NCBI RefSeq assembly: GCF_018977255.1
Contig: NW_024704821.1
Span: forward strand, 186,001 to 229,337
DNA from: Callorhinchus milii
Taxonomy: Eukaryota
Direction of reading: 5' to 3'
Length of the DNA: 43,337 bases
Both the position numbers and the translations under genes were made by a program. Under the pieces are notes generated by a model. The model saw only the letters and a list, made by a program, of their open reading frames with translations, searched no databases and was not told where the DNA came from. Below are positions 1,891-43,235 of the stretch, one piece after another; position 1 is the stretch's first letter, and every line of letters starts with the position of its first letter.

Positions 1891-2839
1891 AGCCAATCTT
1901 TCAGCGCTTTAATGAAGAAACTATAATTGCCTTTAAAACCGTAGGCAGTTTTCCTTATTCCACGCGTCTGTTTAACGAAGAGTAAACAGGAACCCGACTG
2001 CGAGTCGATCGGTGGATCGCTTTACAGAACGAATAATCCCTCAAAAAGATAGTCAGTCAATCCACGACCCTTCGAGATACTCCGCGGTGCACGGTTCGTT
2101 CTCGAGTTTCGCCCAATCTTTAAGCGGTCACTGGATTTGAGAATGTATTGTATGAATCGCTTTGAGAAGCCTCAGTGACGAGATAAGGCACTGTCTCGAA
2201 CGTGAAAGACTGTTAAGGTAGAGACAGTCAGAAGAATGTAGGAAGAGGTATTCCGTGGAAGGCCCGGAATGTGTGCGGACAACTGGACAACGGCCTAATG
2301 TGTGTTGGCTTCACATCCCCGGGGGCACAGTGTCAATTTGGTAACGAGGTGAAACGAGCCATTGAGAGGGTTCAAAGCGAATGGGGATCAGTTCCTCAGA
2401 TGACTCTGCCCCGGTTAGTTGAAAGTTCACTTCCCGCCCCTTTCCGCTCTTGGTTTCTGGTTTAGAGCCGTTTGGGTACACCACACTCGTTTTCTCGCAT
2501 AATTTATGACTGCAAGTGATTGTAATGTACAATTGATTCTGATGAATAACGCTTCATATTTTCACGTTTATTTTCTCTAAAATATGTGTCTGACATATTT
2601 GGAAGCCAACCACCATGCTGATGATTATCCAAACCAAACTGAGAGATATCATAATAATACTTGCATTTGAGACGTCTCAAAGCGCTTGAGAGGCAATAAT
2701 TTCAATTGTAGTGACTGTTTGTTTGGAGGGATAAAACAGTAACCAAATTGCTCTAACGTTCTGTCCTACCGAGAATCGAACCCAGGCCCTGTCGTCTGTG
2801 AGACGAGTGCTTTAACCATTGAGCTACAATATCCCCAAT

Positions 2840-2878
2840 ATGTTTTGTACAGATTTCTCTTACACAGGCAACACTGTG
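2840..2878 (-). other. 23-RSS of V-B pseudogene
   Basis: CACAGTG (2878-2872), 23 nt, ACAAAACAT (2848-2840). Confidence 0.9.
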
Positions 2879-3691
2879 CTCACCGCACAGAAGTAAGTGG
2901 CGGTGTCCGACACCCGCACGCCTTGGATTGATAGACTGATTCTTTTTATCTTTTACAACCGTCGAAGCCCTTATGCTGTCCTTCACGTTAACCTCACTTG
3001 TTCGCAAAGGCAAAAATAGGATAGAGCCGTTTCCATACTGTTTGTACCATTGAAAGAAAGAGTTGGACACAGTGGTGGTGCACTCCACAAATACATTTGC
3101 TTTTGCATTCTCTGACTAGGCCCGAGTTCTCTGTGACACCTCGTTTTCAGCCAAAACACCTGAAAAGATCATAAATAAATGAAGATGAATCACAAAGTGA
3201 GCGAGAGAAAGCCTGGGAGAGACAGACAGACGGAGAAATTGGGCAAAAATATAACATAAAGTGTAGTGACTTTGTGTTTTGTGGGAAAGACTGAGAGATT
3301 GACTAAGAGAGAGACAGAGGGAGAAAATATAGTAGAACATGTATGGACCTTGTTTAGTGGGAGAGACTCAGAGAGAGAGAGAGATAGGTAGAGAGCGAGG
3401 GAGAAAGGGGGAGAGAGGCGACGAGGGGGAGAGAGAGAGAGAGTAGGAGAGGGAGGGAGAGAGACGAAGATAGATGGAGATAGAGATGGAGGCGAGAGGG
3501 AGAGAGACATCGATACAGAGAGAGACTCAGGGAGACTCAGAGAGAAAGACTGCGAGAGAAACGAAGAGACTGAGATAGACTGAGAGACACTGAGAGAAAG
3601 ACAGAGAAGGTGAGAGACTCATACCACACTTGCATGAGAGGGAAAACATTATATTCAAAATAACATACGTTGCATTGAAATTCCGCTTCAC
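2879..3691 (-). pseudogene. TCR V pseudogene, family B (leader 3691-3625, V exon 3159-2879)
   Basis: Homologous to B1/B2. Start codon is GTG, in-frame TAG in FR1 (GCC TAG TCA), 2-nt deletion in FR3 before SLSIQGVRVSDTATYFCAV. Confidence 0.9.
3200..3620. repeat. GA-rich simple repeat expanding the leader intron of the B pseudogene
   Basis: (GA)n/(GAGAC)-like low complexity. Confidence 0.85.
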
Positions 3692-6950: not shown

Positions 6951-7261
6951 AATAATCCTTGCATTTGATATAGCGCTTTTCACGTCGGGAGGACATCCCA
7001 AAGCGCTTGACAGAACACACTGTAAAGTGAATTGACTATATATTTGTGGGCGAACACGGCAGCCAAGTGCGCACAGCAGTGTCCCACAAACAGTCGTAGA
7101 TTCAAAATGACCAATTTATTATTGTTTTTGGTTTTGGAGGGATTCTTATTAGGCTCTGTGTGGAGTAAGGAAACTTGCCCAAGGTTTCGCCCTCTGCCTG
7201 GAATTGAACTCAGGTCTCTCGCTAGCAAAGCGAGTGCTCTAACCACTGAGCTGCAGGACTC
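6951..7261 (-). mobile_element. tRNA-derived SINE, near full length
   Basis: A box and B box head, tgtgggacactgctgtgcgcacttggctgcc core, tail ...cgacgtgaaaagcgctatatcaaatgcaaggattatt. Confidence 0.9.
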
Positions 7262-8118
7262 CACAGGTTCGACAGGGAGGAGCTTCAGTCTGTCTGCAAC
7301 CTTGATTCGGGAGTGTCGAAGGGCACTGAACTGGAGTTTTACTGTGTTTCTTTCCGTGAACTGTGCGTTTTGGTGGTCAGTTTGATGGGAATATTTAATC
7401 TGTTTTGTAAGATATTCAAACTACCGAAGAGTAATGACAAGTGAGCAATCAATCGTTTAATTCGACATCACATCAATTAACACGTAAAAAATATAATTCT
7501 TGCAGTTTAAGCAAGTTACAACGATAGGTTACAGGAAAAACGATGAGCCGTTCCTACTCGAGAGCAAATGTGTAATTCGTCTGATCACGTCTCTTGCTTT
7601 TGTTGGCTCTGATCTGCACGTGAAAACTACGCAGCTTAAAATGCAATTGTAGTTTAAACTAAGCAAGGCCTGAGGATGCACTTGCTCTTTTATACCTGCT
7701 CTTAAGATGTCCATCTGTTACTTATGTATCGTGCCATTAGATAGTCCGTTGCTTTGCAATAGCTGTTTTCCTTAACATACCCGACCCTTTGCTCCCTTGT
7801 CTCTCCCGACCTCTCTTACCTCAACCAATCTTTTTTTCCTGATTGATTTCCATTCAACAGCACTTTACTTTTGGGTATTCATTGTGTCCCGTTTTGCTTT
7901 GTGTTCTATCCTTGACGATAACTTGCGCGTATACCATTGCTGTTTGGTTCATGTCGACTGTGAAATAGGGTTTCTGGCATATCCTGTAATCTCCAAAGCT
8001 AACCTGGGAAATCGGTCGCAGAGTGCAGCATTTCTCGATTTCTATTGAAATAAACATTGTATTAGAGTCGCCGGCAACATTTGTTAATTATATAATTTAA
8101 CAAATAGATTTATTTGTG

Positions 8119-8450
8119 GAGTCCTGTAGCTCAGTGGTTAGAGCACACGCTTTGCAAGTGAGAGACCTGAGTTCATTTCCAGGCAGGTCAGGGCGAAACC
8201 TTGGGCAAGTTTCCTTACTCCACACGCCTAATAATAATCCCTCCAAAAAAAAAAAAACAATAATTAAATTGGTCATTTTCAATCTACGACTGTTTGTGGG
8301 ACATTGCTGTGCGCAATTGGCTGACGCGTTCGCCCACAAATATACAGTCAATTCACTTTACAGTGTGTTCTGTGAAGCGCTTTGGGACGTCCTCCCGACG
8401 TGAAAAGCGCTATATCAAATGCAAGGATTATTATTATTATTATTATATTA
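8119..8450 (+). mobile_element. tRNA-derived SINE, full length, (TTA)n tail abutting the GPCR stop
   Basis: gagtcctgtagctcagtgg head with TGC anticodon-like loop; same body and tail as the other copies. Confidence 0.92.
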
Positions 8451-11400
8451 TATTATTGGAAACTTCACCAATTTTTTCAGTTCCTCCCTAAATTTCGTCT
8501 GGGAAACCGCGTAAATACACGTGTTTGTACAGGACCTCAAAAGCTGCAGCATGTAACCAGTTTGCCAGATAATATAAAAAGGATCCAAAGGGCCTTTGTG
8601 GAAATAACTTTTTGAAAACCTCCAATATATGTAAAATAAAACATACGTCATCCATAATAATATAAAACTGTTTGAAACCGCGAAGAGCAAAACAATGGAT
8701 TTCCTTCTGTTCCTCATCTCCGGATCAATGTCACTCGCTCTTCTATTCCTATCCCCATTACTCCTTCCCCGCAATCTTTTGCGGGCTCGACCGGCCATCA
8801 GTATGTGTCTGACCGTCAGTGCATTGAGCAGCAAAATAATGAGGAATGGGAGAATTGGTGTTAAAATAAAATTAAGCGTGTCAAACGCTTTCCATGCGAG
8901 TGAAGCGAAATAACTCGTTTTAGGATCCCAACCCCACGGTATATCATTAACTATGTACCGTGGTTTAAATATAAAACCCCAGGGAACGTTTATCAGGACG
9001 CAAAGCACACTCAATATTGCTATCACTGCACCAGAAGTTTTTCCTGAGCAATATTTTGTTTTCAGATTTTGGCAACAAATAGCCACATGTCGATCAAAGG
9101 TGAAAGCCACAGTTAACCAGACAGAGATTGACGTTGTAGAAGCAGCCAGTATCATAAGGAGCGCACAAATAGGTGTGATGGACACGAATGAATATGGGAA
9201 ATGAGGAAGAATTATTCGATAGAAAACCACTGATGTGATAATCACGAACAGATCTGCTGTGGACATGGCCACCAGATAGCGAGAGATACATTTGGAGAGT
9301 CCACACCGCCCTCCAGACAGGATTACAATCGATACCAGATTTGCTAGAGAGAGAGAGAGAGACAGAGAAATGCCCATCACAACAATACAACCACTTGCAT
9401 TTACTTAACAAGTCGCTTCAATCAATAAAGTATCAAGAAATCGAAAGCAGTGACTCTCTGAATGAAGAACAGTCGACTTTCTCTTCCACCTCAAAAGCTA
9501 ACCTTATGGATTCGATGTGTGATCGCACAAAACCTGACTCGCAAATGCGTGACATGCAAAGGTACCAAAACAGGGAAAGAGAGAGACAGATATCGATACA
9601 CGCAGACAGAAAAATACAGAGACAAACAGACAGAGAGAGATAGATACAACAATCACTTGGATTTATATAGAGCCCTTCAAGCGACGTGGAGCACTTGATA
9701 CGAACTCGTACAGAGATAACGCGCAAGTTAGAGACAGACAATGGTAGAAGCTGTTAGAACAGAAGCAAAGAGAGATATCTTGTCAGGGATTCTATCATTA
9801 TTTTAAAATTTGTATGATTTTTACATTGCCCGTTTAGAGTCTGTATCGTAACTGAAATGGAGTGAAACTGCATTAAAATGATACAGTTTTAATGCAGGGT
9901 TTCTATACTCCTACGGGTTGTGTTTCTCGATCGGAAACACATAAATGTTGCTTGTGCCCTCGAACGCTGTTTCGCTGTGTGTTTGTGGTCTGTCCCGGAC
10001 GTAAAAACAGAATACCAACTTCAGCAGAAATTGTCAATCATTTTTAAAAGGATAACAGAAGAGCGATTCCCTGACACAGACAGACACAGAGAGACGCAAA
10101 AACAATGCGCAAAAAGGAATCATCGCAATCAGAAAGAATGAGAGAGAGAGACCAGTGGAGAGAGAAACACACTCATGGACAGCGTGAGAGAGAGATTCAA
10201 AGAGAGAGAGAGAGAGAAACACAAACGCACGCAGCGATAAACACCCAGACACAGAGAGAGATACACACCCAGGTAGAGAAACAGAGACACAGACAGAAAA
10301 ATATACGCACAGAGACAGAGAGAGGCACAGCAGACAGCACGAGAGAAATACACACGAAGTCATACATAATTACTGAGCAATGCAGTGACAGAGAAATCAG
10401 AGAATCACAGCGATAGCGACAAGCACGGACTGACAGAGTGTTAAACAGATATACAGAGATGGATTCAGATACAGAGATATCAACTGACAGGGCGAGATAC
10501 ATAGAAAATATCACACAAACAGACAGAGAGATGGAGAGATCCTCATAGACAGACCTACATAGGTAGAGAGAGACACACATATTTATATAGTGTGGGATAC
10601 AAAACTACATGCAGTCAAGGAAAGGTACAGACATACACACAGACAGAGAGAGAGATAGAGAGAGTGAGAGAGAAAGGGACAGAGAAAGAGAGAGTAAAAG
10701 ACAGGGAGACACACAGAGAGACAAATTTCTCATCGCTGTAGGTATTATTGTTTGACAATTTGGATTATTTTTTACTGCCTATCTAAAGGTTGAATTGTGT
10801 ATCAAATAAAGGTACACAATTCTAAACATATGATTTCTATATAATTCTTACAGGTTATGTTTCTTAAAGACAATCATAAACTGTTGCTTATGTGGCAGTC
10901 ATCCGGCCCTCATTAATAATAAAATTATTAATAATAATTAATAGAAATGCTTGCGTTCGATGCAACGCTTTAACGTTTCGTTGTGAGGTCTAAAATAGGT
11001 TCACAAAATAACCTGAAAGTGAATTAACTGTATATTTTGTGGGCGAAATGCGGCAGCCAAACGCACAGAGTTTTACAATTTAAAATTGTGGGTAAATTGC
11101 CAGGAAACAACACAGGCCAAAAGCATCGACTATCACGGTTCGGACCCTCAGCTCAATGTTGTGTTGTGGTCTTCAATCCGCAAACTTATAACTGAGAGGT
11201 AAGAACACTAATAAATGAGTCAAACGTATGGATAATCATTGGCTAAACCCACAGTTTAAAATAATAAAACCAGTTGCGATTTTTCCCTCTGTGTAATATA
11301 TAATCATGATAGTAATTTTACTTGCATTTGATATGACACTTTTCACTTGTTATAGACATATCAAAATGCTTCACTTGATATATCCATTTACCGAGCAGTA

Positions 11401-13294: not shown

Positions 13295-14228
13295 GTTTGA
13301 CCGCAAGAGACCAGAGGATGGTAAAACGAAGAATGTCATCAGACTGGGAAAATATTACTTGGGGAGTTCAGCAAGGATTTGCTTTTCGACCTCCGTTGTT
13401 TAGTATTTGAAATATCTGGAACTAGGAGTCACGAGCACAGTGGCTACGTTTACATGTGACAATTACCTAATGAATGTAGTAGGTTGCAAATCTGAACAAG
13501 ATAGGTGAGGAGGATTCGTAGGATTTTGAAAAAGATTTGGAATTGGCCAGTACGGTGGCAGATGAAACTCAGTGTGGAGAAATGTAAAGAACTTCATAGG
13601 GAACAAAATAGCGATTACTGAACGCAAGGAAAATAACATGTATGGAGAAGAAAATGGAGCTGGGGTTTCTGTCTGACAATAAACTGAATCTCATGCAACA
13701 ATGCTCTGTGGCAATGAGAAAAACTAACCAGATTTTGGGATGTATCAAAAGATCAATACCAAGCCGCAACAGTCGGGTGATCACGCCACTCCACAAATTA
13801 TTGGTGAGACAATACTTAGAGTCCTGTAGCTCAGTGGTTAGAGCACTCGCTTTGCAAGTGAGAGACCTGAGTTCAATTCTAGGCAGGTCAGGGCGAAACC
13901 TTGGGCAAGTTTCCTTACTCCACATGCCTAATAATAATCCCTCCAAAAACAAAAACAATAATAAATTGGTCATTTTCAATCTACGACTGTTTGTGGGACA
14001 TTGCTGTGCGCAATTGGCTGCCGCGTTCGCCCACAAATATACAGTCAATTCACTTTGCAGTATGTTCTGTGAAGCGCTTTGGGACGTCCTCCCGACGTGA
14101 AAAGCGCTATATCAAATGCAAGGATTATTATTATTATTATTATTATTAGAGTACTATGCCCAGTTCCGTTCGATGCATTACCAAAAGGATGTTGGGTGAG
14201 TCGAGAGGATAAAGAGGAGGGTGACCAA
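13295..14228 (+). mobile_element. Degenerate CR1 LINE ORF2 (RT C-terminal part), interrupted by a SINE
   Basis: Decayed CR1 motifs: GVQQG..PPLF, WQMKLSVEKCK, QCSVAMRKTNQILGCIKRSI...LVRQYLE, and YYAQFRSMHYQKD after the SINE. Confidence 0.85.
13819..14147 (+). mobile_element. tRNA-derived SINE nested in CR1 with TTAGAGT target-site duplication
   Basis: TTAGAGT at 13816-13822 and 14146-14152; the CR1 reading frame resumes across it. Confidence 0.92.
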
Positions 14229-15383: not shown

Positions 15384-16154
15384 ATGCTCATGTGGGAGAC
15401 ATGTGCTGTGCTCTCAATCACTCTCAGCTTACTTTGCCGTTAGTGTCTTTTGTATATTTTCTTTTTTTAATATCTTATTATACCTTTTACAACATTACAA
15501 CATTAATAATCGTTTGATTAGACATTGTGCCTTTTCATATATTCGAGCCGATTGCGGACAACAGTTTTGACCGAATGTTCATGGATTGAGTAACCAAATT
15601 ATTACCTTTCTTTATTAAATTAAAATTGAAGGGCTAATTACCCCTGGAAAAGATAAACTGCAATCGACTAACAAACGTGTTCCGATTTTCTGCTTGATAA
15701 ACAGAGGCGTATGGAGCAAGGATAATTTCGAAAGCTTTCGTCCTACCCTGGTATAGATCCTCTTGCTTGTGATGCGAATATTGTCACCAATACACTGCAG
15801 AGCTCCACATAAGACAAACTTGCTGTTCCACTATCTTTTCTTTTGAATCACAGGAAACAGTCTGCAAAACACGGTGAAACAACAGAAAGGCGATACAACA
15901 GTTGAAGATGGAAATGATGTGAAATTATCCTGCAGCTTAAAGAAAATCAGTGACACCTCCTACCTCTACTGGTACAGACAAGCTTCCAGGAACGCTCCTG
16001 TCTACATACTTCGCTCAATTTCAGGAACGGATTATATGAGCTCTGACTTCCCAAATGATTCTCTCCACCGTCAATAAAACAAGTGAATATTTCGAACTGA
16101 GTATTGTAACCGTCCTGATCAGGGACAGTTCGTATATTACAGCGCCAAGAGGCC
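15384..16154 (+). pseudogene. TCR V pseudogene, family C copy 1 (leader 15384-15438, V exon 15854-16154)
   Basis: Leader MLMWETCAVLSITLSLLC/GTTAGT. Two 1-nt deletions near 16065-16072 lead to TAA; further indels in FR3; second Cys codon reads AGC. Confidence 0.9.
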
Positions 16155-16193
16155 CACATTGCTGTCGTACTATGGCGGCTCCGTACAACAACT
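16155..16193 (+). other. 23-RSS of C1 (degenerate)
   Basis: CACATTG, 23 nt, ACAACAACT. Confidence 0.85.
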
Positions 16194-16217
16194 CCAACTG
16201 TTTGTTTTATCGCGAAA

Positions 16218-16232
16218 CCGCGAGGGGGAGTC
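16218..16232 (+). promoter_or_regulatory. CTCF-like motif 24 bp 3' of the C1 nonamer
   Basis: CCGCGAGGGGGAGTC resembles the CTCF core CCACCAGGGGGCGC. Confidence 0.55.
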
Positions 16233-17852
16233 ATTGCATTTGTATTTATTTTAATACAGAGAAAATTTCACAAGCAGATTGGCGACACAAGGGCGAAATT
16301 TGCTGATTTGTTTATAATCAAAGCAGCGCTTAAAACGTTATCGATGAAATCAGTTAAAGGGAATCATGTCGAGAGTCCTGTGGTGTACTGTTTAGACTTA
16401 AGACAATTCAGTTCGCAAGCATGAAGTTCTGGGATCGATTCCCGGGTGGAACGAAACATTGGGCAAATGTGTTTGCTCCGCACACATGCTTCTGCATACC
16501 TTGAGGTTGGAGCAACACGGTTTGTCATTCGGATCGCTTTTCCAGGATTAATAATCCCTTAAAAATAATGACAACAATTTGGTAACACAATCGTTGACTG
16601 ATTGTGTGCAATAGACCACCACTTTTCGCTCCCGAAAAACGCTGTACATTATTACACCACACACAATATCCTACGAAACTCTTTCTGACGTCCCAACGGC
16701 ATTATGAGGCGTTGCATCAAATGCAACCATTAGTATTATCCTAATTGTTATTTTGGGTTCAGCTAAACAATTCTATTGCGAAGCATGACCACTGGGTGTC
16801 ATTGGTGCGCTGATGTTTCCCACAGACACCAATGGTTGAAAAGTCTTTAAAAATTCAATAACATATATTATTGTACCCGATTTCCAATCGTTTTCAGAAG
16901 ATTGCCAACCTCTTCCTTTTACTTGGTTTGCACATTCCATTATGAACAACAGATGCATTGGAAACGTAGATTATTCGAATCAAAGTTTATCACAAAGTGT
17001 AGGTGATCAGTCTACCCAATGTTAGGGTGCTTCAGGAATCTTTCACTGTCCAACTCCCACGATTATTGGAAATCTCTTATTCCTTATATCCTAAACTATC
17101 CTTAACTTGGCATCTGTACGACACTGAGAATCGTATGATCTAATTCTCTCAATAACAAGGTTCCTGATATATTATTCTTGCATGTCGCCAAGTTACCAAG
17201 ATCTGGGCACTTTCTAAAGCTATCTTGGTCCTATAGCTGAGTGGCTAGAGCAGTCTCCTCGCAAGTAGGAGACGTGTTTTCGATTCCCATCGGGGCGGAG
17301 TTTTGGCCAAGTTTCCTTACGCCACATGCCTCGGTTTAACCTCGCAGTAAATAGGAACCCATTTATTACTCGATGATGGATCGATTTCCGGTGTAATAAA
17401 ACTTTCAATAGAGTGGTAAACTGGTCACTCCATCCTAGACTGTATGTGTGACATTACTGTGTGCTATTGGATGGCGTAATTGTAAACCTGAAATTACACA
17501 ATCAATTGGCAAAACAGTATAATCTGTGAAAGAATTCGAGACGACTCGAAGACGTGAAAAGGCTCTATGTCAATATCAAAAATCATTACTGTTATTTGTA
17601 CCTTTCCTTCAGTATTTGTAACTGTGTCACTTTACATTGTCTCTTTCACATATTACTGTGGTTTGCCACAGCGAATCGAATGGAATCTGAGCACAAACGA
17701 TAGGCGGAGTCGCAATACACCTTCAGCAATAAACAGAGAAAGGATAGTGCCATCTTCTCACATAAAAAAGTCTATAAACCGGGTGCTACGCTTAAACGAT
17801 TTCTCACTGCATGTCAACGAAACAAGTTCACTTGAATCTACACGAGTTGAGA

Positions 17853-18305
17853 ATGAAGCAGATTTACAACGCAAAATATATTATTTTGAATTTAGTTATA
17901 TTTCCACTGTGTAGGTAGCACAGGAGTTTGGGCAAATATTCTAGTTTTCCTGCAAAGTGATTTCAAATTTTCTTCGCAGATATTTTCGGAATTTCTTGCA
18001 AAGAATTTTCATTTCTATTTCCCAGGTGTTTTGGCTGAAAGCGATGTGTCACAGAGACCTGAGGCCATGACAGAGAATGAACATGGAAATGGATCTATGG
18101 AGTGCAGCATCACTGGAAACAACCCTTACTTTCATTGGTACACACAGCATGGAAACGGCTCCATGCGGTTCTTGGTTTTGGGAAAAAGCGACATCAATGT
18201 GAAGGACAGGATAAGAGCTTTGGCTAATACAAGGCAGGGAAACTGCACGCTAACGATCCAAAACGTGAGAGTATCAGACACCGCCACTTACTTCTGTGCG
18301 GTGAG
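17853..18305 (+). CDS. TCR V segment, family B copy 1, apparently functional (leader 17853-17910, V exon 18026-18305)
   Basis: Leader MKQIYNAKYIILNLVIFPL-T/GTAGGT; open exon ...MECSITG...WYTQ...NCTLTIQNVRVSDTATYFCAV. Confidence 0.9.
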
Positions 18306-18344
18306 CACAGTGCTGTGTGTCTAAGAGGGACCTGTACAAAAACA
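18306..18344 (+). other. 23-RSS of B1
   Basis: CACAGTG, 23 nt, ACAAAAACA. Confidence 0.95.
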
Positions 18345-19652
18345 TTCTGGGTATACTGTAGATCATTGGATGGAGCAATCGCCTGCAAACGAGTGGCTGG
18401 GTTCGATTCCAGCTGTGCAAAACGGAGGATAAATTTCGTTGCTCCACATGCCACTGTTTGACTTGCAATAATTAGAAACCCGGTTGTACGTCGATTAGCA
18501 GAACACAGTTCCGGAATAATAATTCGTAAAAAATATCGAAAAAGAATACTTAATCGATCGCATGTCTACGTGACACCTTGTGTGAAATTGGCTGGCGTGT
18601 TTCAACCACTGCATATTTCTTACTGCCAATAAATCTATTTACCTGGCATTAAGTAGGAAACTGGTTGGTCATCGATTGGCGGGATCAAAACGTATAAGAA
18701 AGTGTCGCAATTCCTTCAAATTAAAGATAGATAATGTGGTCACTCAATCAATCAATCTTTGTGGGATATTCTTGTGCGCAACTGGCAGCCAAGTTCCGTC
18801 ACCACAAAACGCAGTCACTATATACTAAGTTATAACCGTGAAGCAATTCGAGACGTCCAGAAGATATAATACGTCGCAATAGAAATATCCAAGCTGATAA
18901 TTGTAAGTCGCAGTTTGTTTTGGATACACAAAATCACAGTGAAGTTAATCTCCATGTGTCAGACACACAGGTTACAAACGTGAACGTTAATACATGAAGC
19001 ATCATTCAGTGAAATGAACCGTAGAGTACAACAAATTTTAGCTACAAAATCGACCCAAACGGCTGTAAACCAGAATCCTAGAGCGGAAAGGGGCAGAACT
19101 TTCAACTAATTGGGGCAGAGACATCTGAGAAACTGCTGACGTCACGTGGCTCCCCCCTTCCGCTTTGAACACTCTCAATGGCTCGTTTCTCCTCGTTACC
19201 AAATTGACACCCGCCCCCGGGGATGTGAAGCCAACACACATTTGGCCATTGTCCAGTCGTCTGCACACACTCAGGGGCTTCGACTGAATACCTCGTCTTA
19301 CCTTATTTTGACTCTCTATGTAACAATAATCCTTGACACTCGATTCCGCGCCTTAATTCGTCACTGAAGCCTCTCAAAGCGCTTCACATAATATACTGTA
19401 AACCTCAGTGACTGTGTATTGCATTTGCCAAGAAACGAAAACGTATTGCGCACAGCGGAGTCTCTCAAACAGCCGACGATAGAGTGTAATTTTTTTTTTA
19501 GTGATTATCATTCCCCAGAAATTCAAACCGCCATCCGACTAACAACCTAATTCCTACTTACTTCTCGATAAACAGATCCGTGTGGAGTACGGAAACCTGC
19601 CTGTATTTTAAGGAAACTTGCATTTCTTCATCAAGTCGCAGAAAGATCGGCT

Positions 19653-20099
19653 ATGATGTGCTATTATTCTTTAATAATCATCCTCCTGAAAGCTGACCTT
19701 TCGCTCTGGGGTGAGTTTGGTTCTCAGACAAGACCCGTTTTCTCGTTGTGTGTAATTGTATTTAATTCCACCACAATTTACGAGTGAGTTTTTTAAACAG
19801 ATTGTCTTGTATTTATCAGGGGTCAGTGGACAGGATAAAGTCTCCCAGTCGCCACTCTCTGTGTCTGTTGGTGAGAAGGAACAAGTGCTTATCAGCTGTT
19901 CCACAACAGAACAGGGTCAGGGCTTACAATGGTACAGACAGTACCCGAACCAGGCTCTCAAACACTTTGTAACAGGACAGACAGGAGAGCAACAGAAGGA
20001 GAGGATCACAGCTACAATGAACTATTGAGAAGGTCAGTAACCTGAGCATCACAGGCACAGAAGTGACAAATCCCGCCACCTACTTGTGTGCAGTGGAGA
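19653..20099 (+). pseudogene. TCR V pseudogene, family A copy 2 (leader 19653-19710, V exon 19820-20099)
   Basis: AAC TAT AAA GAG in A1 is AAC TAT T GAG here (net 2-nt loss), giving TGA at 20026-20028. The rest matches A1. Confidence 0.9.
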
Positions 20100-20138
20100 C
20101 ACAGTGAGACAATCACATAGAGAGGCCGTACATAAACC
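20100..20138 (+). other. 23-RSS of A2
   Basis: CACAGTG, 23 nt, ACATAAACC. Confidence 0.95.
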
Positions 20139-20744
20139 CCCAGTGATCAGTCAGCAATTTGTTCATCACAATAACTGCTCAGCGCTCACTGTCTCTTAGT
20201 TTCCCTCAATTTCCTTATTAATGTCGGGATGTTCATGTCATGGCTGCAGGACTGTGGAGACGTGTAAATCCCTGTTGAGAACACTCGACTCGCAAGCGAT
20301 GAGTCGTGGGATCGATTTCAATGAAGGGGGTAACTTTAAGCAAATATGCTTTCTTCACAGACATACCTCGGTTTACCTTGCAGTGAGCTGGAAATCATCC
20401 AGCAATTCCCATTTTGTTCACCATTATAAACGTACTGCATCCTCTGCCTCTGAGTTTCCTTCAACCTCCTTAATCACGAAATTTTCATATCATATCTGCC
20501 GGATTGTGCTATCCTGTAATATAATAGTTTGAGGACTCGACTTGCAAGCGAGAGTAACTGGGTTCGAGTACCCGACAGTAGAGGGCTATACCCTTGAAAA
20601 GTTTGCTTTCTCTTCACGCATAACTCCGCTTAAGTAGATATTGATACTCGGGTAATATCTCTTAAAATATTGTTTTAAATTATAAGGACTAAAACGCATT
20701 TCATGACTACTTATGCGGCACCGCTGTGTAAAATTGGCTGCCTC

Positions 20745-22260: not shown

Positions 22261-23136
22261 ATGGCCATGTATATGTGTGTAGCAGCCGCCATCATTGCCT
22301 TGTCAGGTAAGCGGAAAACTTACCCCTTAAGTCTGGTTCCTGCAAATGAAATCCAAAGCTTATGTTTTATTGCACCAAATAACCGATACGGTACAGGACA
22401 TTTGTGGTCGTGGAGTACTATAGTTCAGTGGTTAGAGCACTTGTGTAGCAAGGGAGAGGAGCTGGACTCGATTCCAGGACGGAACAGGTCAAAACCTTCA
22501 GCAAGTTTCCAGACTCCACACACTCGCGAGTGCTTTCCTATGAATACGTAGGATTCCAGGTATAAGTCAATGGGCAGATGCCTTTTATGGTGGTGATAAT
22601 CCCTCAAAAAATGTTACCTGTGATAATATGGGGGCGTCATGCAGGACATTTTGTGCGTTGCTGCACTGCGCATACGCTGGTGTGCTTCGCCCGGAAAATA
22701 CACTTAATATCCATTGTGTGAAGCGCTTCGCCATCTCCAAGTTGTGATAATTCGCTATATCAGTTGCAAGCTTTATCACGGTCATTATAATTATTTTATT
22801 GAACGCTGTTGCATTGTATCTGTTTCCCAGGATATTGTAGAGGTGATTCGGTGACACAGCTCCAATCTACAGTGACAGTGAATGAAGAGGAGGATGTTAC
22901 TCTCCAATGTAATTACACAACTACAAGCAACACTCTCTATCTGTTCTGGTACCGTCAGTATCCTAACAAATCTCCGGATTATATCCTTGGACATACAGCA
23001 GGGGCCAACCGCAACATGCAGACTTTGCGAAAGAACGTTTCTCAACGAAAGTGGATGCAAGTCGTAGAACCGTCCCCTTAAATATAGCCCAAGTGAGAGT
23101 TGCAGACTCCGGGGCGTATTACTGTGCACTGAGCCC
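22261..23136 (+). pseudogene. TCR V, family D copy 1, single-base frameshift (leader 22261-22306, V exon 22831-23136)
   Basis: atatccttgg at 22981 versus atatcctttgg in D2: one T missing after FR2, otherwise intact. Could be a sequencing error. Confidence 0.8.
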
Positions 23137-23175
23137 CACAGAGGCACAGATCAGCGGTTCCGCCTTACAAAAACT
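23137..23175 (+). other. 23-RSS of D1
   Basis: CACAGAG, 23 nt, ACAAAAACT. Confidence 0.92.
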
Positions 23176-23380
23176 ACCACGTGGAGTCCTGCAGCTCAAT
23201 GGTTATAGCACTCGTCTAACAAGCATCAAGCAAGCGAGATACGTGTGTTCGATTCACGGCAAAGCGCGTTGAGGCGTTTCGACGATGTGGTTTGGCACTC
23301 TAATAATTGCAACGATTATTATTGCTAAATACGTTCATGTTATTTTCACAGAAATAGCTTCATATATTTTGCATTCTGGG

Positions 23381-23712
23381 GAGACCTGTAGCTCAGTGGT
23401 TGAGCACTCGCTTTGCAAGCGAGAGACCTGAGTTCAATTCCAGGTAGAGGGCGAAACCTCGGGCAAGTTTCTGTACTTCACAAAGAGCCTAATAATAATC
23501 CCTCCAAAACCAAAAACAATAATAAAATCGTTCATTTTCAATCTACGACTGTTTGTGCGACATTGCTGTGCGCAATTGGCTGCCGCGTTCGCCCACAAAT
23601 ATACAGTCAATTCACTTTACAGTTTGTTCTGTGAAGCGCTTTGGGCCGTCCTCCCGACGTGAAAAGCGCTATATCAAATGCAAGGATTATTATTATTATG
23701 ATTATTATTATT
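23381..23712 (+). mobile_element. tRNA-derived SINE, full length
   Basis: Same family as 8119-8450; duplicated at 35374-35697. Confidence 0.9.
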
Positions 23713-25070
23713 ACCTGCACGTTGAAGTGTCTTCCTTAACTTGCATTTACGTAGTGAAATTCGTAACGGGAAGTTATGACGGGCAGAAATCTGTTTGCTA
23801 TCTACTGTCTCCAAATGCACAAATGCTGTAGCTGCAATCCGCCAGCAGATATCGCATTGGAAACATATATAACATGAGCTCCGACTGACAAAACTTGTCA
23901 CATTCCTTTCTGCAGCTTACATACTTGGCAGCAATAACAGGAGCTTCTTGTTACAGTTGACATAGTTCACTCATAAACACTGTTGCTGCTTCAGCTGAAG
24001 TGTAAAAATCTTGTCTGAAAAATGATAAGCACAAAACTTAAATTGCTCCAGAAGCATCAGTTGTGTCACTTTTTATTTGTGTTGCATTTCTGCAACATAA
24101 GCAGCGGCCTTTATGTGGATCTCACTGCGGTAATAAAAGTGTGAATTTTTGTAAAGAACAATACGGTCATTGATATTGGTTTAGCTTGAAAAAGAGATTA
24201 CAACCGCCCTAGTTTAATTTAATTTAAGAATTCAAGAACTATCTCGGATCGCCTGTGAAATTAAACTGCCGAACTGGGTGCAAAACCAACAACATTCAGA
24301 CTCATAACAACAAGTACCAGTAACAGAGGCAGATTTTCACCTCAGCCACCATGATAGAAAGTAAACTTTTTTTCTAAAGCTGGGCTGCTTGGTTCAAAAT
24401 CAAACAAGTGAATGCATTCAGAACATTAATGAAAATAAAAATGAGCATTTGATATGGAACCATATTGCGTCATGGAGGCGTGTGAAAGCGCTTCACAGAA
24501 TATAGTTTAAAACAAAATTGTGAGTGGGTGAAACGCGACTACTCACATCCTGGCCCAGAATCTCTCGCCTCCAATCCGCGGCAGATCAACTTCGTGATCC
24601 TCACAGGAGAAAGTAACATCAACAGAGAAATGTTGTCACCTCAGCCTTGATGTCAGAACGTAAACCTTTATCCCTTCAAAGCTCTGCTGCATGTCTCAAC
24701 CATTCATCAACTTAATGAATGCATTCAGTTTAATCATAAAGTTTAAAATAAAAATAAAGTTTTCATTTGATGTAGCGACTGATCACATCTTAGAGGCATC
24801 TCAAAGCAGTTTACATAATACATTGTAAAGGGAAATGTCACTGTATGAAATGTATGTCAATGATCCCATCCAAACCCAGACCCATTGGCTCCCAATCGCC
24901 AGCAGATCAAGTTCAAGTTCCTCTGATTAGTGGGAAACGCCTACAATTGTACAAAATAAACCATTCAACATGTCAGATCAGCCGCTCCCTCACAACTTGT
25001 CGCTGAAGCAGCAACACAGCGATATACAAAGGAAGAGATCACATTATCTGTCCACACCGCAGCAGCCAAC

Positions 25071-25848
25071 ATGACAGCTCACTGCCAGTTACTGATAGCA
25101 ATCCTCACCATAGCCAGTAAGTGTGTGAGGACATGCACAGCGCATGCTTTTTGCATTATAAATTTTCCGAAGCATAATGTTTAGAGAGGTCGCCTCACCA
25201 ACGAGAGAACCCGAGTTTGATTGCCGGGCAATGAAACCTTTCAATGCGTTTGCTTACACCTCACCAATCTGTTTCCACAGCAGTAAGTAGGAAACATGTT
25301 GATAGTCGATTCCCCGATCGCTATCGGAGGTCAATAACCCATTATCGTACAAATCAATATACAATAATATCGGTGAAATACTGCGGTGTTCAATTGTCTG
25401 CTCAGTTTCGCCAAAAATATAATCAATTCGCTTTGCAATATATTCTGTGGTTTCTTTGAGACTGATGTACTGTGCGGTAACGTGCTCTATAAAGTGGATA
25501 AAAGCGAATTATAAGTTGCTCGGAAACATGTGTTGCTCTTGTTCTTGCAGAAGTGAGCGGGCAAGATGTTGTATCCCAATATCCTCGCGAGAAAACAGAA
25601 ATTGAAGGGCAAGACGTGGCACTAAACTGCAATATTTCAAGATTGGCCACTGTGTTCTGGTACAGGCAAAACCCCGACGGAGATCCTCAATACGCGCTCA
25701 GGATATTTACCTCTGGAACGGTAGACAAATCTCCTGATCTACCTGAACGATTCACTGCTGAGCTGATCAAGGAGAATAAAGTAACTAAGCTGCAGATACT
25801 CGGGGCTGTTGTGTGTGACAGCGCTGTGTATTACTGTGCCCTGGACCC
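25071..25848 (+). CDS. TCR V segment, family E copy 1, apparently functional (leader 25071-25116, V exon 25551-25848)
   Basis: Leader MTAHCQLLIAILTIA/GTAAGT; open exon ...LNCNISR...WYRQNP...RFTAEL...DSAVYYCALDP. Confidence 0.92.
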
Positions 25849-25887
25849 CACACTGTAACAGGAAGGCAGAATCCCCGTACAAAAACT
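25849..25887 (+). other. 23-RSS of E1
   Basis: CACACTG, 23 nt, ACAAAAACT. Confidence 0.92.
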
Positions 25888-26588
25888 CAGCAGAAAGTCA
25901 TGACTTCCGCTCACACATTTAATTTGGTGCTTTCAGCAAACTGATGTGGTTATGCAATATTAACAAGGAGAGTGGTGTAAACAGACTGTGCGGTCTTGTT
26001 GTATATGGGATTAATCAGTCGTTTTGCAAGCTAGGGGAACCGGGTTCTTTGGAAAAAAACGCTTTTTCCTGCCAGCAGACAGCGGTTGAATATAACAACA
26101 AAAGAGAACTAATGCACCAGAATGGAGCCCAAAATAGATATACCTCACCAAGTCTTGTCTCTTGCCTCTCAGCACCCAGTAATCTGTTAAATTAAGCAAA
26201 CACTATGCCTTCCTCCAGGGAGAAAGAGAAAATTCGTTTCCATAGGCACATTTACACGCGAAGATGGCATATATATGTGGAACTCATGTATGTGTTTTCG
26301 TGAACTGGAATATAGGTGTAACTGTGTGCAGACACACTGCTCTGCAAAGACATGTCACTGATGGAAGAGAACCATTGGATGAGTGAGATGGCAGAGCAGA
26401 GAAGGTGACGCACAATGACAGAAACACAAGGTTTGTACATAACATTCAGACCTGCTCCCTCACATTATGTGACAACTTCTGTATGTTATTTCCTGTTGAG
26501 CTCTCCTCACGGTATCTTACAGCCTCCCAGCCAACTTTCTCCAACTCCACCATCAACGCTCTCACAACGTCCCGTGACATTAATACAT

Positions 26589-27431
26589 ATGACAATGTAT
26601 GTCTATGTGGTAGCAGTGATCATTACCTTGTCAGGTAAGCGACAAACTCGCTCTATTAGTCTGCTTCATGTGCATACTATCCAATGAATATATATTTTTG
26701 CATTACATAACCAATACGGTACACGACTCATGCATTCCTGCAGCAAACGTGTTGACTTGGGTTTAGTTCACGGCTTGGACATAGCGAAACCTCAGGCAAG
26801 TTTCCTTCTTCCAGAAACGCACCACTTTTTACATCGAGATATGTAGGTACCCGTTCGTTGGTCGATCGTCGGATCCGTTTTCGGTGTTAACAATCGCTTA
26901 ACAGGTACCAGTAATAATAATGCTGTCAGTTAATCCATGACTTTTTATTAGGAGAATGCTGTGCGCAATTTGCTGCCACGTGTCGCCCACACAATACACA
27001 TTCTCAGAATGTTCCATGAAGTATTTGGAGACGCAATTATATAGTATGGCGCTGTATGAAAAGCAATAATTTGTATTATGATTATTGTTATGGTATTGAA
27101 CGCTGATATGGGTCTGGTTTCCAGGACATTGTGGAGGAGACGCTATAACACAGCTCCAATCTACAGTGACTGAAAGGGAGGATGTTTACCTGCAGTGCAA
27201 TTATACAGCTACAAGCGAATACAATACCTACCTGTTCTGGTACCGTCACTTTCCCAACAAATCTCCAGAATATATCCTTAGCACAGACACCAACAACAGG
27301 ATCAAGAAAGGCGCGGAATTTGAAGAAGAAAGTTTCTCAAGGAATGTGTCTCAAGCGGAAAGAACCGTCCCATTAAATGTATTGCAAGTGAGAGTTACAG
27401 ACTCCGCGGGGTATTACTGTGCACTGAGCCC
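26589..27431 (+). CDS. TCR V segment, family D' copy 1, open frame (leader 26589-26634, V exon 27125-27431)
   Basis: Leader MTMYVYVVAVIITLS-G/GTAAGC; exon GHCGGDAITQ...LQCNYT...WYRH...DSAGYYCALSP. Confidence 0.88.
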
Positions 27432-27470
27432 CACAGAGGCACAGATCAGCGGTTCCGCCCTAAAAAAATT
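27432..27470 (+). other. 23-RSS of D'1 (weak nonamer)
   Basis: CACAGAG, 23 nt, AAAAAAATT. Confidence 0.85.
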
Positions 27471-27989
27471 GCCATGTGGGGTCCTGTGGCTCAGTGGTTA
27501 CAGCACTCGCCTCACAAGCGATAGAAACCTGCAGAACGAAACATTGTGCAACATTCTTTATTCCACAGAGTAGTCACTGGTTAACAGCAGTAAATAGGAA
27601 GCAGGCTGTTAATCGATTGGAGGATCGCTTTTTCAGAGGCAATATTTCCTTCTGCATAATAGTGTTAAAAGTAAATTTGTTACTTCATCCAATTAGTCAC
27701 CGATAATTACAATTTGCTGCCGTGCTTCGCCCTCACACTATGCAGTCAATTCGTTTTCTGCATATTCAATGAAGCACTGAGTGGCATCTCAAAGATGTGA
27801 TGTGGCGCTATATCAAATGCAACAATAAATATTATTGCTATTAACTGTAGTCATCTTATCATCAAAGTAATAATACAAAATGTCTTGCTTTCTGGGGAGC
27901 GCTGCCACATGTACGATTCTTTCTATGCTGCATTGATAAGTAAGTAAACATCAAAACAAACAAGTTCCGTTTAAATTGCTTCAACAAAA

Positions 27990-28306
27990 ACTATCTGTAG
28001 AGAAACTGTTTCTTCTGGTGGTTGGGGAAATGCAGAATAATGGTGCATTAGAGCCAGTCCAGTTAGCAGAGAAATTGGTAGGAAAAAATTACGAAAAATT
28101 TAAGGAAATCTGGAAAACGTCCACAAAGATTCTGGAGATGTTCGTTCCATTCATATTTTCCAGACTGAGTTGGATACATTTATTTTAGCTCAGAATTTCA
28201 AGGGTTACGGAGAAAAGGTTAGAATATGTGTTGAGAGATAAATCAGACATGATGTAATATAACGTTGCACCAAACTCAAGGACCTGATGGTCTGCTCCTA
28301 TTCCTA
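27990..28306 (+). mobile_element. Degenerate CR1 3' fragment (copy at ~40043-40359)
   Basis: gtagagaaactgtttcttctggtgg...caagggttacggagaaaagg...ggacctgatggtctgctcctattcct resembles a CR1 3' end. Confidence 0.6.
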
Positions 28307-28809
28307 TTTAGCGCTTTCCACGTATGGGAGCGTCTTGGCGAGTCACTAAAGAAACGAAACCATTTAGTGTATTGAAGTTAAAGAAGAATGAACATTACAT
28401 TTCATTTAAAGTCTAGTGAGCACATTTGACTTGCGACGACGTCCTGACATGAACTGACTTGAATAAATGTCAATATGTTGTCACTCTGGTGCAAAATGCT
28501 CCCAGTCAGCTAACTGTTCAGTCAAATGATATAATCGATGAAACAATAAGACAAGGAATTCAATAGAAATGGAGGAGCAAGTGGCGCAGCAAGTGTTAGC
28601 ACAGAGACACGTCAATGTAAAAGAATGTGAATGACACCGAATATCCGAGTGTTCCAGAGAGGAATAGAAAATAAGGGGAACGAGCAGGGAAACTAGACTA
28701 ATGCATAAACTTCCTGTGCGGAAGATAGCACCAAGGAAAGGCAAGACGGGCCCAAAATAATTATGCTATGAAACCTCTCCAATTGTGTACGTGTTGTAGC
28801 TACAATCCA

Positions 28810-28823
28810 CCAGCAGATGGCGA
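28810..28823 (+). promoter_or_regulatory. CTCF-like motif (copy at 40863-40876)
   Basis: CCAGCAGATGGCGA matches the CCASYAGRKGGCR core. Confidence 0.6.
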
Positions 28824-30337: not shown

Positions 30338-31118
30338 ATGCTCATGTGGGAGACATGTGCTGTGCTCTCAATCACTCTCAGCTTACTTTTCCGTTAGTAA
30401 CTTTTATATATCTTTTTTTAACATCTTGTTATAACTTTTACAACAAGGTAACATTAATAATCCTTTGATTATATATTGCGCCTTTCCATATATTCGAGAC
30501 GATTGTCAGCAGCAATTTTGATCAAATATTCTCATCGATTGAGTGTCCAAATTATTATCTATTTTATTATTGTTATTTCATTGAAGGACTAATTACCCCT
30601 GGTAAACAGAGATGCCAATCGAATAAAAAACTTGTTTCTATTTACTGCTTGGTAAACAGAGGAGCATGGAGCAAGGAAAATTGCCTAAGCTTTCGCCCTG
30701 CCCTGCTGTAAAAGCCAGATCCATTTGCTTGTGAGGCGATTGCTCTCAACACTACACTGCAGGAATCCACAGAAGACAAACTTGCTGCTCAACAGTATTT
30801 TCTTTTAAATCACAGGAAACAGCCTGCAAGACATTGGGAATCAACCGATTGCTGAATATCAATTGAAGAGGGAAAAGATGTGAAATTATCCTGCACCTTA
30901 TTGAAAATCAGTGATGCCAACTCTCTTTACTGGTACCGACAAGCTTCCAGGAACTCTCCTGTCTACATACTTTACTCTCTTTCAGGGAAGGATTATATGA
31001 GCTCTGACTTCCCACATCGATTCTCCTCCACCGTCAATGAAACGAATGAAGATTTCGAACTGAGTATTGTCACCGTCCTGATCAGGGACAGTGCCGTGTA
31101 TTACTGCGCCAAAGAGGC
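30338..31118 (+). pseudogene. TCR V, family C copy 2, 1-nt frameshift in FR1 (leader 30338-30392, V exon 30816-31118)
   Basis: gaatatcaattgaa (14 nt) versus gatacaacagttgaa (15 nt) in C1 gives TGA at 30881. The downstream frame is intact to DSAVYYCAKEA. Confidence 0.85.
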
Positions 31119-31157: not shown

Positions 31158-31181
31158 GCAACCGGTTCATTTGCTGCTGAA

Positions 31182-31196
31182 CCGCCAGGGGGAGCC
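31182..31196 (+). promoter_or_regulatory. CTCF-like motif 24 bp 3' of the C2 nonamer
   Basis: CCGCCAGGGGGAGCC. Confidence 0.68.
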
Positions 31197-42395: not shown

Positions 42396-43173
42396 ATGCT
42401 CATGTGGGAGACATGTGCTGTGCTCTCAATCACTCTCAGCTTACTTTTCCGTTAGTAACTTTTATATATCTTTTTTAACATCTTGTTATAACTTTTACAA
42501 CAAGGTAACATTAATAATCCTTTGATTATATATTGCGCCTTTCCATATATTCGAGACGATTGTCAGCAGCAATTTTGATCAAATATTCTCATCGATTTAG
42601 TGTCCAAATTATTATCTATTTTATTATTGTTATTTCATTGAAGGACTAATTACCCCTGGTAACAGAGATGCCAATCGAATAAAAAACTTGTTTCTATTTA
42701 CTGCTTGGTAAACAGAGGAGCATGGAGCAAGGAAAATTGCCTAAGCTTTCGCCCTGCCCTGCTGTAAAAGCCAGATCCATTTGCTTGTGAGGCGATTGCT
42801 CTCAACACTACACTGCAGGAATCCACAGAAGACAAACTTGCTGCTCAACAGTATTTTCTTGTAAATCACAGGAAACAGCCTGCAAGACATTGGGAATCAA
42901 CCGATTGCTGAATATCAATTGAAGAGGGAAAAGATGTGAAATTATCCTGCACCTTATTGAAAATCAGTGATGCCAACTCTCTTTACTGGTACCGACAAGC
43001 TTCCAGGAACTCTCCTGTCTACATACTTTACTTCTCTTTCAGGGAAGGATTATATGAGCTCTGACTTCCCACATCGATTCTCCTCCACCGTCATGAACGA
43101 ATGAAGATTTCGAACTGAGTATTGTCACCGTCCTGATCAGGGACAGTGCCGTGTATTACTGCGCCAAAGAGGC
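42396..43173 (+). pseudogene. TCR V pseudogene, family C copy 3 (leader 42396-42450, V exon 42872-43173)
   Basis: Shares the C2 FR1 frameshift, plus extra small indels near 43032 and 43092-43098. Confidence 0.85.
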
Positions 43174-43212
43174 CACACTGCTGCCGAGCTATGGCGACTC
43201 CGTACAAAAACT
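43174..43212 (+). other. 23-RSS of C3
   Basis: CACACTG, 23 nt, ACAAAAACT. Confidence 0.92.
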
Positions 43213-43235
43213 GCAACGGTTCATTTGCTGCTGAA

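What the first reader, a model, noticed from the sequence alone, without database searches (positions are those of the whole stretch)
16194..16232. CTCF-like site fixed 23-24 bp downstream of every family C RSS
CCGCGAGGGGGAGTC (16218), CCGCCAGGGGGAGCC (31182) and the same motif at 43236 follow the nonamer at constant distance. Between C1 and C2 the motif is better conserved than the surrounding sequence. In mouse Igh, RSS-adjacent CTCF elements of proximal VH genes promote accessibility during loop-extrusion RAG scanning. The same architecture in a chondrichthyan TCR locus would point to a very old or convergent V-selection mechanism. All strong motifs here point the same way, consistent with a recombination centre to the right.
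Basis: partly seen in the sequence, partly recalled or inferred. Interest (0 to 1): 0.75.

Follow-up and report, generated by a model that had tools for sequence, protein, structure and literature searches.

The report
CTCF-like site behind chimaera V genes
A good match to the CTCF genome-looping motif sits 24 bases behind the recombination signal of one family of chimaera T-cell-receptor V genes, as in mouse and human antibody genes. It is inherited by gene duplication, shows no sign of selection, and here lies behind three broken genes, so it is a plausible but untested looping site.

Summary
The sequence observation holds. A 15-base CTCF-like motif lies on the V-sense strand 24, 24 and 23 nt after the 23-RSS nonamer of the three family-C V segments (16218, 31182, 43236).

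C2 and C3 are 98.8% identical recent duplicates, so there are only two independent copies. By a CTCF weight matrix, C2/C3 match strongly (17.2 bits, p about 8e-7) and C1 matches weakly (9.6 bits, p about 4e-5).

Elephant-shark (Callorhinchus milii) predicted proteins that read through the RSS show the motif in the same register in at least seven more family-C genes. It therefore belongs to the family-C V cassette.

It is not specially conserved:
- C1 versus C2 gives 13/15 for the motif against 82% for the whole duplicated block.
- Across the family it changes as fast as the RSS spacer and faster than the heptamer and nonamer.
- The changes seen cost as much matrix score as random ones.

All three local family-C genes are pseudogenes.

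The layout parallels the RSS-associated CTCF sites of mouse and human proximal VH genes (17-19 bp, one orientation). Function remains untested.

The scan has noted a similar "CTCF site 24 bp after an RSS" on another piece of this genome (s1-139930), and co-oriented CTCF-like modules elsewhere in the array.

The parts
15384..15438 (+). C1 leader exon (ATG to splice donor)
   Evidence: Read. It encodes MLMWETCAVLSITLSLLC, matching the N-terminus of C. milii P0006. It is the best-conserved stretch between C1 and C2.
15854..16154 (+). C1 V exon, a pseudogene: frame shift near 16056-16064 and a second near 16130; Cys104 codon is AGC (Ser)
   Evidence: tblastn frame change 1 to 2; alignment; sequence.
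16155..16193 (+). C1 23-RSS (CACATTG, 23 nt, ACAACAACT)
16194..16217 (+). 24-nt gap between nonamer and motif; 58% identical to the C2 gap
16218..16232 (+). C1 CTCF-like 15-mer CCGCGAGGGGGAGTC, a weak match (matrix 19-mer 16215-16233, 9.6 bits, p 4e-5)
16233..16239 (+). ATTGCAT directly after the motif; its two full codons (Leu-His) are invariant in every family-C copy seen
30338..30392 (+). C2 leader exon
30816..31118 (+). C2 V exon, a pseudogene: 1-nt deletion in FR1 gives an in-frame TGA at 30853
   Evidence: the deletion is shared with C3
31119..31157 (+). C2 23-RSS (CACACTG, 23 nt, ACAAAAACT)
31182..31196 (+). C2 CTCF-like 15-mer CCGCCAGGGGGAGCC, a strong match (19-mer 31179-31197, 17.2 bits, p 8e-7; 12/14 to CCASYAGRKGGCRS)
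42872..43173 (+). C3 V exon, a pseudogene: the C2 deletion plus further indels (three reading frames)
43174..43212 (+). C3 23-RSS, identical to that of C2
43236..43250 (+). C3 CTCF-like 15-mer, identical to C2; the gap is 23 nt because of a 1-nt deletion
16405..16627 (+). tRNA-derived SINE shared by the C1 and C2 flanks (C2: 31276-31504, 79% identical). It shows that homology continues beyond the motif.

Best explanation
The motif is an inherited part of the family-C V cassette: leader, V exon, 23-RSS, 24 nt, then a CTCF-consensus 15-mer on the V-sense strand.

Its strong versions are most likely real CTCF-binding sites. These are C2/C3 here and the inferred CCGCCAGGGGGC-type copies in other elephant-shark family-C genes.

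Inferred mechanism, by analogy with the RSS-associated CTCF elements of mouse and human proximal VH genes:
- Bound CTCF would face downstream, towards the D/J/C side.
- It would stall cohesin extruding chromatin from the recombination centre.
- That would hold the adjacent RSS there for RAG.

Shown here: the sequence match, the register, the orientation and the family-wide presence. Inferred: binding, loop anchoring and any effect on V usage.

In this window the site sits behind three pseudogenes and is simply carried along by duplication.
For: - The weight matrix gives 17.2 bits, p about 8e-7, for C2/C3. About 0.09 such hits are expected in the window.
- C2/C3 match the published consensus CCASYAGRKGGCRS at 12/14. 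With up to 2 mismatches there are 13 window hits against 4.3 expected.
- Outside V exons, consensus hits are 9 V-sense to 1 antisense.
- The best sense-strand score exceeds the best antisense score behind 13 of 14 V genes.
- Seven C. milii genes show the motif codons N-R-[Q/E]-[G/W]-[E/A]-P the same number of codons after the nonamer.
- Inferred scores are 15-20 bits for the RQGAP type, and about 8.7 bits or more for all variants.
- Mouse IgH RSS-associated CTCF sites lie 17-19 bp 3' of the nonamer in one orientation, with a non-conserved spacer (PMC6746451). They promote proximal VH use (PMC7930373).
- Skate domain boundaries use the same motif with an orientation bias (PMC10115646).
Against: - There is no constraint beyond descent. 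C1 versus C2 gives 87% for the motif and 82-85% for promoter, V exon and RSS.
- Across nine copies the minimum number of changes per codon is 1.0 in the motif, 1.0 in the RSS spacer, 1.4 in the gap, 0.25 in the nonamer and 0 in the heptamer.
- The observed changes cost 3.2-6.4 bits each; random changes cost 4.6 bits on average.
- C1 is a weak match.
- All three local V genes are pseudogenes.
- Only family C has the site next to its RSS; the other four V families in the window do not.
- No binding data exist.
It was cross-checked only against consensus strings quoted in PMC6746451.
Confidence: 0.45

Rival explanations
1. Neutral hitch-hiker. A CTCF-like string arose once, by chance, in the 3' flank of the ancestral family-C V gene. 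Cassette duplication then copied it. Its fixed distance and orientation reflect shared ancestry only, and it has no role in recombination, whether or not CTCF sometimes binds it.
For: - The motif evolves at the rate of the unconstrained spacers, and its substitutions are as damaging as random ones.
- C2 and C3 are recent duplicates.
- All local copies sit behind pseudogenes.
- Earlier follow-ups on other pieces of this genome likewise found no selection on the CTCF-like motifs of the intergenic modules (s1-139367, s1-139531, s1-139590).
Against: - A hit at p of 1e-6 or better within 100 nt of one of five V-family RSSs, on the sense strand, is expected with probability of roughly 5e-4 before allowing for the many motifs a reader might notice.
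- It reproduces a layout with proven function in mouse Igh.
- All strong motifs in the window share the V-sense orientation.
- The most critical motif positions (matrix positions 5, 9, 10, 13, 14) are unchanged in all ten copies, although that alone has p of about 0.09.
Confidence: 0.4
2. The G-rich element, alone or together with the invariant ATTGCAT that follows it, binds a different factor. Candidates are an Sp/KLF/MAZ-type zinc-finger protein, or a C/EBP- or Oct-like factor on ATTGCAT. It would act as a small V-flank enhancer or accessibility element rather than as a loop anchor.
For: - The codons covering ATTGCAT (Leu-His) are invariant in all nine family-C copies compared, while the CTCF core varies.
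- In C2/C3 and two C. milii genes the string extends to ATTGCATCA, which resembles a C/EBP-ATF composite site (from memory, not tested).
- No match to the upstream CTCF module was seen in the 24-nt gap (read by eye).
Against: - The 15-mer fits the CTCF matrix far better than chance.
- The run of G alone is a poor Sp/KLF or MAZ site.
- Invariance of 6-7 nt across nine related copies is not significant (about 0.1).
- No matrix scan for other factors was run.
Confidence: 0.08
3. It is a real CTCF site, but its role is general domain insulation or control of germline V transcription, for example shielding each V cassette from the neighbouring SINE and the next promoter. It would not present the RSS during RAG scanning.
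For: - Co-oriented CTCF-like motifs recur through the array at variable distances from V genes.
- In mammals, TCR-locus CTCF sites are mostly promoter-associated (my own knowledge).
Against: The 24-nt spacing to the nonamer is specific to the RSS-associated class. Nothing in the window discriminates between the two roles.
Confidence: 0.07

Closest known systems
RSS-associated CTCF-binding elements of mouse and human proximal VH genes (for example the VH81X CBE; PMC6746451, PMC7930373)
   Same: - A CTCF core motif lies a fixed short distance 3' of the nonamer of a V 23-RSS.
- It has a single orientation relative to V transcription.
- The spacer length is kept while the spacer sequence is not (C1 versus C2: 58%).
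- The site is inherited within V families.
   Different: - The locus is TCR-type, not IgH, and the animal is a holocephalan.
- The distance is 24 nt to CCGCC (22 nt by the 14-mer definition used for mouse) against 17-19 in mouse and 19 or 48 in human.
- The core is CCGCCAGGGGGAG or CCGCCAGGGGGC, with a CpG at the methylation-sensitive position, rather than GACCAGCAGGGGGC.
- Across the family the motif is not as conserved as the RSS.
- The local copies flank pseudogenes.
- Binding and function are untested.
CpG-containing CTCF sites of the H19/Igf2 imprinting control region (CCGCGNGGNGGCAG) and chicken beta-globin FII (CCGCTAGGGGGCAG), as quoted in PMC6746451
   Same: Both start with CCGC followed by a G-run. 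C1 matches CCGCGNGGNGG at 11 of its first 11 positions, and C2 matches CCGC.AGGGGG.
   Different: The 3' triplet differs (AGC or AGT instead of CAG), and the context is different. Methylation sensitivity is only inferred.
Intergenic CTCF-like plus E-box/ETS modules of this same V array (this window: 23839, 28807, 35860, 40860; earlier notes s1-139409, s1-139590)
   Same: They have the same V-sense orientation, lie behind V genes, are spread by cassette duplication, and show no detectable selection on the CTCF-like core.
   Different: They lie 0.7-1.4 kb from the RSS, inside a block of about 200-300 bp with an E-box/ETS pair about 95 bp further on. The core is of the CCAGCAG type and is unrelated in sequence to the family-C flank.

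Membership tests
Vertebrate CTCF-binding site (core motif MA0139.1 / CCASYAGRKGGCRS) | Significant match to the core motif | tested here: met
   C2/C3 score 17.2 bits, p 8e-7, and match the consensus at 12/14. C1 scores 9.6 bits, p 4e-5, and has more than 2 consensus mismatches.
Vertebrate CTCF-binding site (core motif MA0139.1 / CCASYAGRKGGCRS) | Occupancy by CTCF in vitro or in vivo | not testable with these tools
   No ChIP, ATAC or gel-shift data are available here, and no paper on CTCF in chondrichthyan antigen-receptor loci was found.
Vertebrate CTCF-binding site (core motif MA0139.1 / CCASYAGRKGGCRS) | Motif evolves more slowly than its flanks (usual for functional sites, though not strictly defining) | tested here: not met
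   C1 versus C2 gives 87% for the motif against 82% for the block. Family-wide there is 1.0 change per codon, equal to the RSS spacer. The substitutions are as costly as random ones.
RSS-associated CTCF element of proximal VH type | Fixed short distance 3' of the V nonamer | tested here: met
   The gaps are 24, 24 and 23 nt in the window. Seven C. milii read-through translations show the same codon count, but only in-frame copies could be seen. Mouse: 17-19 bp.
RSS-associated CTCF element of proximal VH type | Uniform orientation relative to V transcription | tested here: met
   All three copies lie on the V-sense strand, as do all other strong motifs in the window.
RSS-associated CTCF element of proximal VH type | Motif as conserved as the RSS and more conserved than the spacer between them | tested here: inconclusive
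   The C1/C2 pair fits: RSS 85%, gap 58%, motif 87%. The family-wide count does not: heptamer 0, nonamer 0.25, motif 1.0, gap 1.4 changes per codon.
RSS-associated CTCF element of proximal VH type | Present at functional, recombining V genes and lacking at pseudogenes | tested here: not met
   C1, C2 and C3 all change reading frame inside the V exon, and C1 also has Ser for Cys104. Apparently intact family-C genes exist in C. milii, but their DNA could not be fetched.
RSS-associated CTCF element of proximal VH type | Anchors loops to the recombination centre and raises use of the adjacent V gene | not testable with these tools
   This needs Hi-C or 3C, repertoire sequencing and motif editing.

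The most novel reading that the evidence does not exclude
RSS-adjacent, V-sense CTCF elements are a working part of V-gene choice in a holocephalan TCR locus. On this reading, presenting RSSs to RAG by loop extrusion, with a CTCF site about two helical turns behind the nonamer, either dates to before the split of cartilaginous and bony vertebrates or was reinvented in a TCR locus.
Probability: 0.15. Interest if true: 0.8.

Novelty: new member of a known kind. Interest (0 to 1): 0.4.

Why it matters
RSS-associated CTCF elements are the best-understood device by which loop extrusion presents particular V genes to RAG. They are documented only for mammalian IgH proximal VH genes.

A bound, functional equivalent in a chimaera TCR V family would push that mechanism back to the base of jawed vertebrates, or show that it evolved twice. 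The family's natural motif variants would also allow a direct test:
- strong: CCGCCAGGGGGC type;
- intermediate: GGGGGAG or TGGGC types;
- weak: C1 and the Lys variant.

As it stands, the evidence is a sequence match inherited by duplication, so its value is as a precisely specified candidate for ChIP and repertoire tests.

Tried and rejected
- **Fetching DNA of other family-C genes.** The look-up of encoding contigs returned nothing for P0001, P0003, P0006, P0011, P0012 or a window ORF. Cluster members are UniRef-only. The family-wide test therefore rests on read-through translations, which hide many third-position changes and include only in-frame copies.
- **PDB phmmer to type the V genes as TCR or Ig.** Not discriminating, because multi-domain antibody chains dominate. 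The TCR alpha/delta call rests on CAL/CAV-type V ends, the translocon layout and literature on the C. milii locus.
- **CpG retention as a sign of constraint.** Dropped, because CpG observed/expected is 0.74 across the window.
- **Upstream CTCF module in the 24-nt gap.** No convincing match by eye.
- **Motif as part of a SINE or other repeat.** Rejected. The only copies in the window are the three family-C flanks, and the tRNA-derived SINE starts about 65 nt further 3'.
- **The divergent P0012/P0014 subfamily.** It has different codons at the motif position, which cannot be interpreted without DNA.

Full report
**What is there**

The window is a V-gene array. Fourteen V segments with 23-nt-spacer RSSs were found, twelve on the + strand and two inverted at the left end. 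Their ends read CAL, CAV or CAK, and no J or C exon is present.

The three family-C segments have this structure:
- a leader exon (C1: 15384-15438);
- an intron of about 415 nt;
- a V exon (15854-16154, 30816-31118, 42872-43173);
- a 23-RSS.

That is 3 matches against 0.07 expected from shuffles. They lie 24, 24 and 23 nt after the nonamer.

The best protein matches to the family-C V exon are all Callorhinchus milii V-set proteins, at 74-87% identity. C1 is 97% identical over 65 residues to one of them. The genome is therefore the elephant shark or a very close relative, as earlier follow-ups on this genome also concluded.

**How many independent copies**

A self-comparison shows that C2 and C3 lie in a 3.5-kb duplicate that is 98.8% identical (27730-31284 versus 39783-43337). 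The differences are 29 substitutions and 10 small indels, one of which makes the C3 gap 23 nt. C1 and C2 are 83% identical over 1.1 kb. The window thus offers two independent observations, not three.

**Is it CTCF-like**

- C2/C3 score 17.2 bits (p about 8e-7). This ties for the best score in the window with 28807 and 40860.
- C1 scores 9.6 bits (p about 4e-5).

As a check that does not depend on my memory, I used the consensus CCASYAGRKGGCRS quoted in PMC6746451. With up to two mismatches it finds C2 and C3 (12/14) but not C1. In total there are 13 hits against 4.3 expected, though duplicates inflate the count.

Orientation is consistent:
- Outside V exons, the consensus hits are nine in V-sense and one antisense. 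After collapsing the recent duplicates this is five to one.
- Within 1.5 kb behind each V gene, the best sense-strand score exceeds the best antisense score in 13 of 14 cases.

**Is it conserved more than its surroundings**

A global C1/C2 alignment gives these identities:

| Region | Identity |
|---|---|
| Promoter and leader | 82% |
| V exon | 82% |
| RSS | 85% |
| 24-nt gap | 58% |
| Motif | 87% (13/15) |

The 3' side is then broken by indels until a shared tRNA-derived SINE resumes at 79%. The motif is an island only relative to its immediate neighbours. Against the block average, 13/15 is what chance gives about half the time.

**Family-wide evidence**

Several C. milii gene predictions run through the RSS into the non-coding flank. 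They therefore carry a translation of that flank.
- Seven of them, plus C1 and C2, align without gaps from the Cys104 codon to the motif.
- The nonamer codons V-Q-K-L are followed by seven codons and then by N-R-[Q/E]-[G/W]-[E/A]-P-L-H.
- The motif is therefore in the same register in all of them. The caveat is that only in-frame copies could be recognised.

Counting the minimum number of amino-acid states per codon gives these changes per codon:

| Segment | Changes per codon |
|---|---|
| Heptamer codons | 0 |
| Nonamer | 0.25 |
| RSS spacer | 1.0 |
| 24-nt gap | 1.4 |
| Motif | 1.0 |

The motif changes fall at matrix positions 4, 8, 11, 15 and 17. They cost 3.2-6.4 bits each, against a mean of 4.6 bits for random single changes. 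The inferred variants range from about 9 bits (K-R-E-G-E-P) to 15-20 bits (R-Q-G-A-P, that is CCGCCAGGGGGC).

So the site is an ancestral feature of the cassette. It remains recognisable in every copy, but it shows no purifying selection that these data can detect.

**State of the genes**

tblastn with the C. milii proteins shows a change of reading frame inside the V exon of all three genes: C1 (1 to 2), C2 (2 to 1) and C3 (three frames). C1 also has Ser for Cys104 and a weaker RSS. C2 and C3 share the same 1-nt deletion in FR1, so that deletion is not a random assembly slip. All three local family-C genes are pseudogenes in this assembly.

**Comparison with what is known**

Mouse IgH has RSS-associated CTCF sites whose core lies 17-19 bp 3' of the nonamer.
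- More than 98% of them lie in one orientation.
- They are as conserved as the RSS, while the spacer between is not.
- Human sites lie at 19 or 48 bp (PMC6746451).
- Functional proximal VH genes carry such a site and pseudogenes lack it. Mutating or repairing the site changes V usage (PMC7930373).
- Skate domain boundaries carry MA0139.1 motifs with an orientation bias, so the motif and its code apply to cartilaginous fish (PMC10115646).

The family-C site shares the position class, the orientation and the spacer behaviour in the C1/C2 pair. It differs in these respects:
- the locus type and the lineage;
- the spacing (24 nt, or 22 nt by the mouse 14-mer definition);
- the core sequence, which is CpG-containing and resembles the H19 and FII sites;
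- family-wide conservation;
- its presence behind pseudogenes here.

No paper on CTCF in chondrichthyan antigen-receptor loci was found.

**Verdict**

The sequence observation is real and family-wide. The constant distance is explained by descent. The match is good enough, and the parallel with proximal VH genes close enough, that binding by CTCF in the strong copies is about an even bet. A role in V selection is plausible but unsupported by any signature of selection.

Other V families in the window carry co-oriented CTCF-like motifs 0.2-1.4 kb behind the RSS, inside a separate module with an E-box/ETS pair. Earlier follow-ups found those also lacked selection on the CTCF core. A first-reader note on another piece of this genome reports a perfect CTCF site 24 bp after an RSS (s1-139930). 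That fits the inferred CCGCCAGGGGGC-type copies, but I could not check it.

Noticed in passing
window 23839-23857, 28807-28825, 35860-35878, 40860-40878 (blocks about 23790-24030, 28758-29000, 35811-36050): A paralogous block of about 200 bp lies behind family-B V genes. It carries a V-sense CTCF-like core (CCACCAGCAGATGGCG scores 17.2 bits; its paralogues have GGC changed to ATC and score 8.8-12.7). About 95 nt further on there is a conserved AACAGGTGCTTCCTGTT (E-box plus ETS-like). It matches the module described in earlier notes on this genome.
   Followed up: partly
C. milii proteins P0003, P0004, P0008-P0011, P0013, P0014: Public elephant-shark gene predictions for family-C V genes read through the RSS into the non-coding flank. 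One (P0013) joins a family-B-type leader to a family-C V exon. These are annotation artefacts, but they preserve a translation of the flank.
   Followed up: yes
window 16233-16239, 31197-31203, 43251-43257: ATTGCAT follows the motif directly. Its two full codons (Leu-His) are invariant in all nine family-C copies compared, although the CTCF core itself varies. In C2/C3 it extends to ATTGCATCA. It is unexplained and the invariance is not statistically significant.
   Followed up: partly
window 18345-18420, 23176-23250, 33239-33310, 35174-35250; also 16405-16627 and 31276-31504: tRNA-derived SINE heads (A- and B-box-like) begin within about 10 nt of the nonamer in two other V families, and about 105 nt after it in C2 (about 210 nt in C1). 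The same point appears in note s1-139791.
   Followed up: no
window 1233-3162 versus 18023-20303: An inverted duplicate (75-78% identical) of a pair of V genes. Its two RSSs, at 1441-1403 and 2878-2840, lie on the minus strand, so these V genes would have to join by inversion.
   Followed up: no
window 8451-9380 (-): An open 310-codon rhodopsin-family GPCR ORF (Pfam 7tm_1, E 8.7e-16) lies inside the V array. It recalls the receptor genes that border mammalian TCR alpha/delta V regions.
   Followed up: partly
window 22480-31284 versus 34485-43337: The 12-kb tandem duplicate is a mosaic: 93.4% identity over the first 5.3 kb and 98.8% over the last 3.5 kb. In the latter part, 22 of the 29 substitutions cluster in 29343-29550. 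This suggests gene conversion or two duplication events.
   Followed up: no
window 6951-7266, 8112-8451, 13819-14152, 23373-23711, 31825-32058, 35366-35697: A dispersed repeat of about 320 bp, 91-96% identical between copies, in both orientations. It is probably a young SINE.
   Followed up: no
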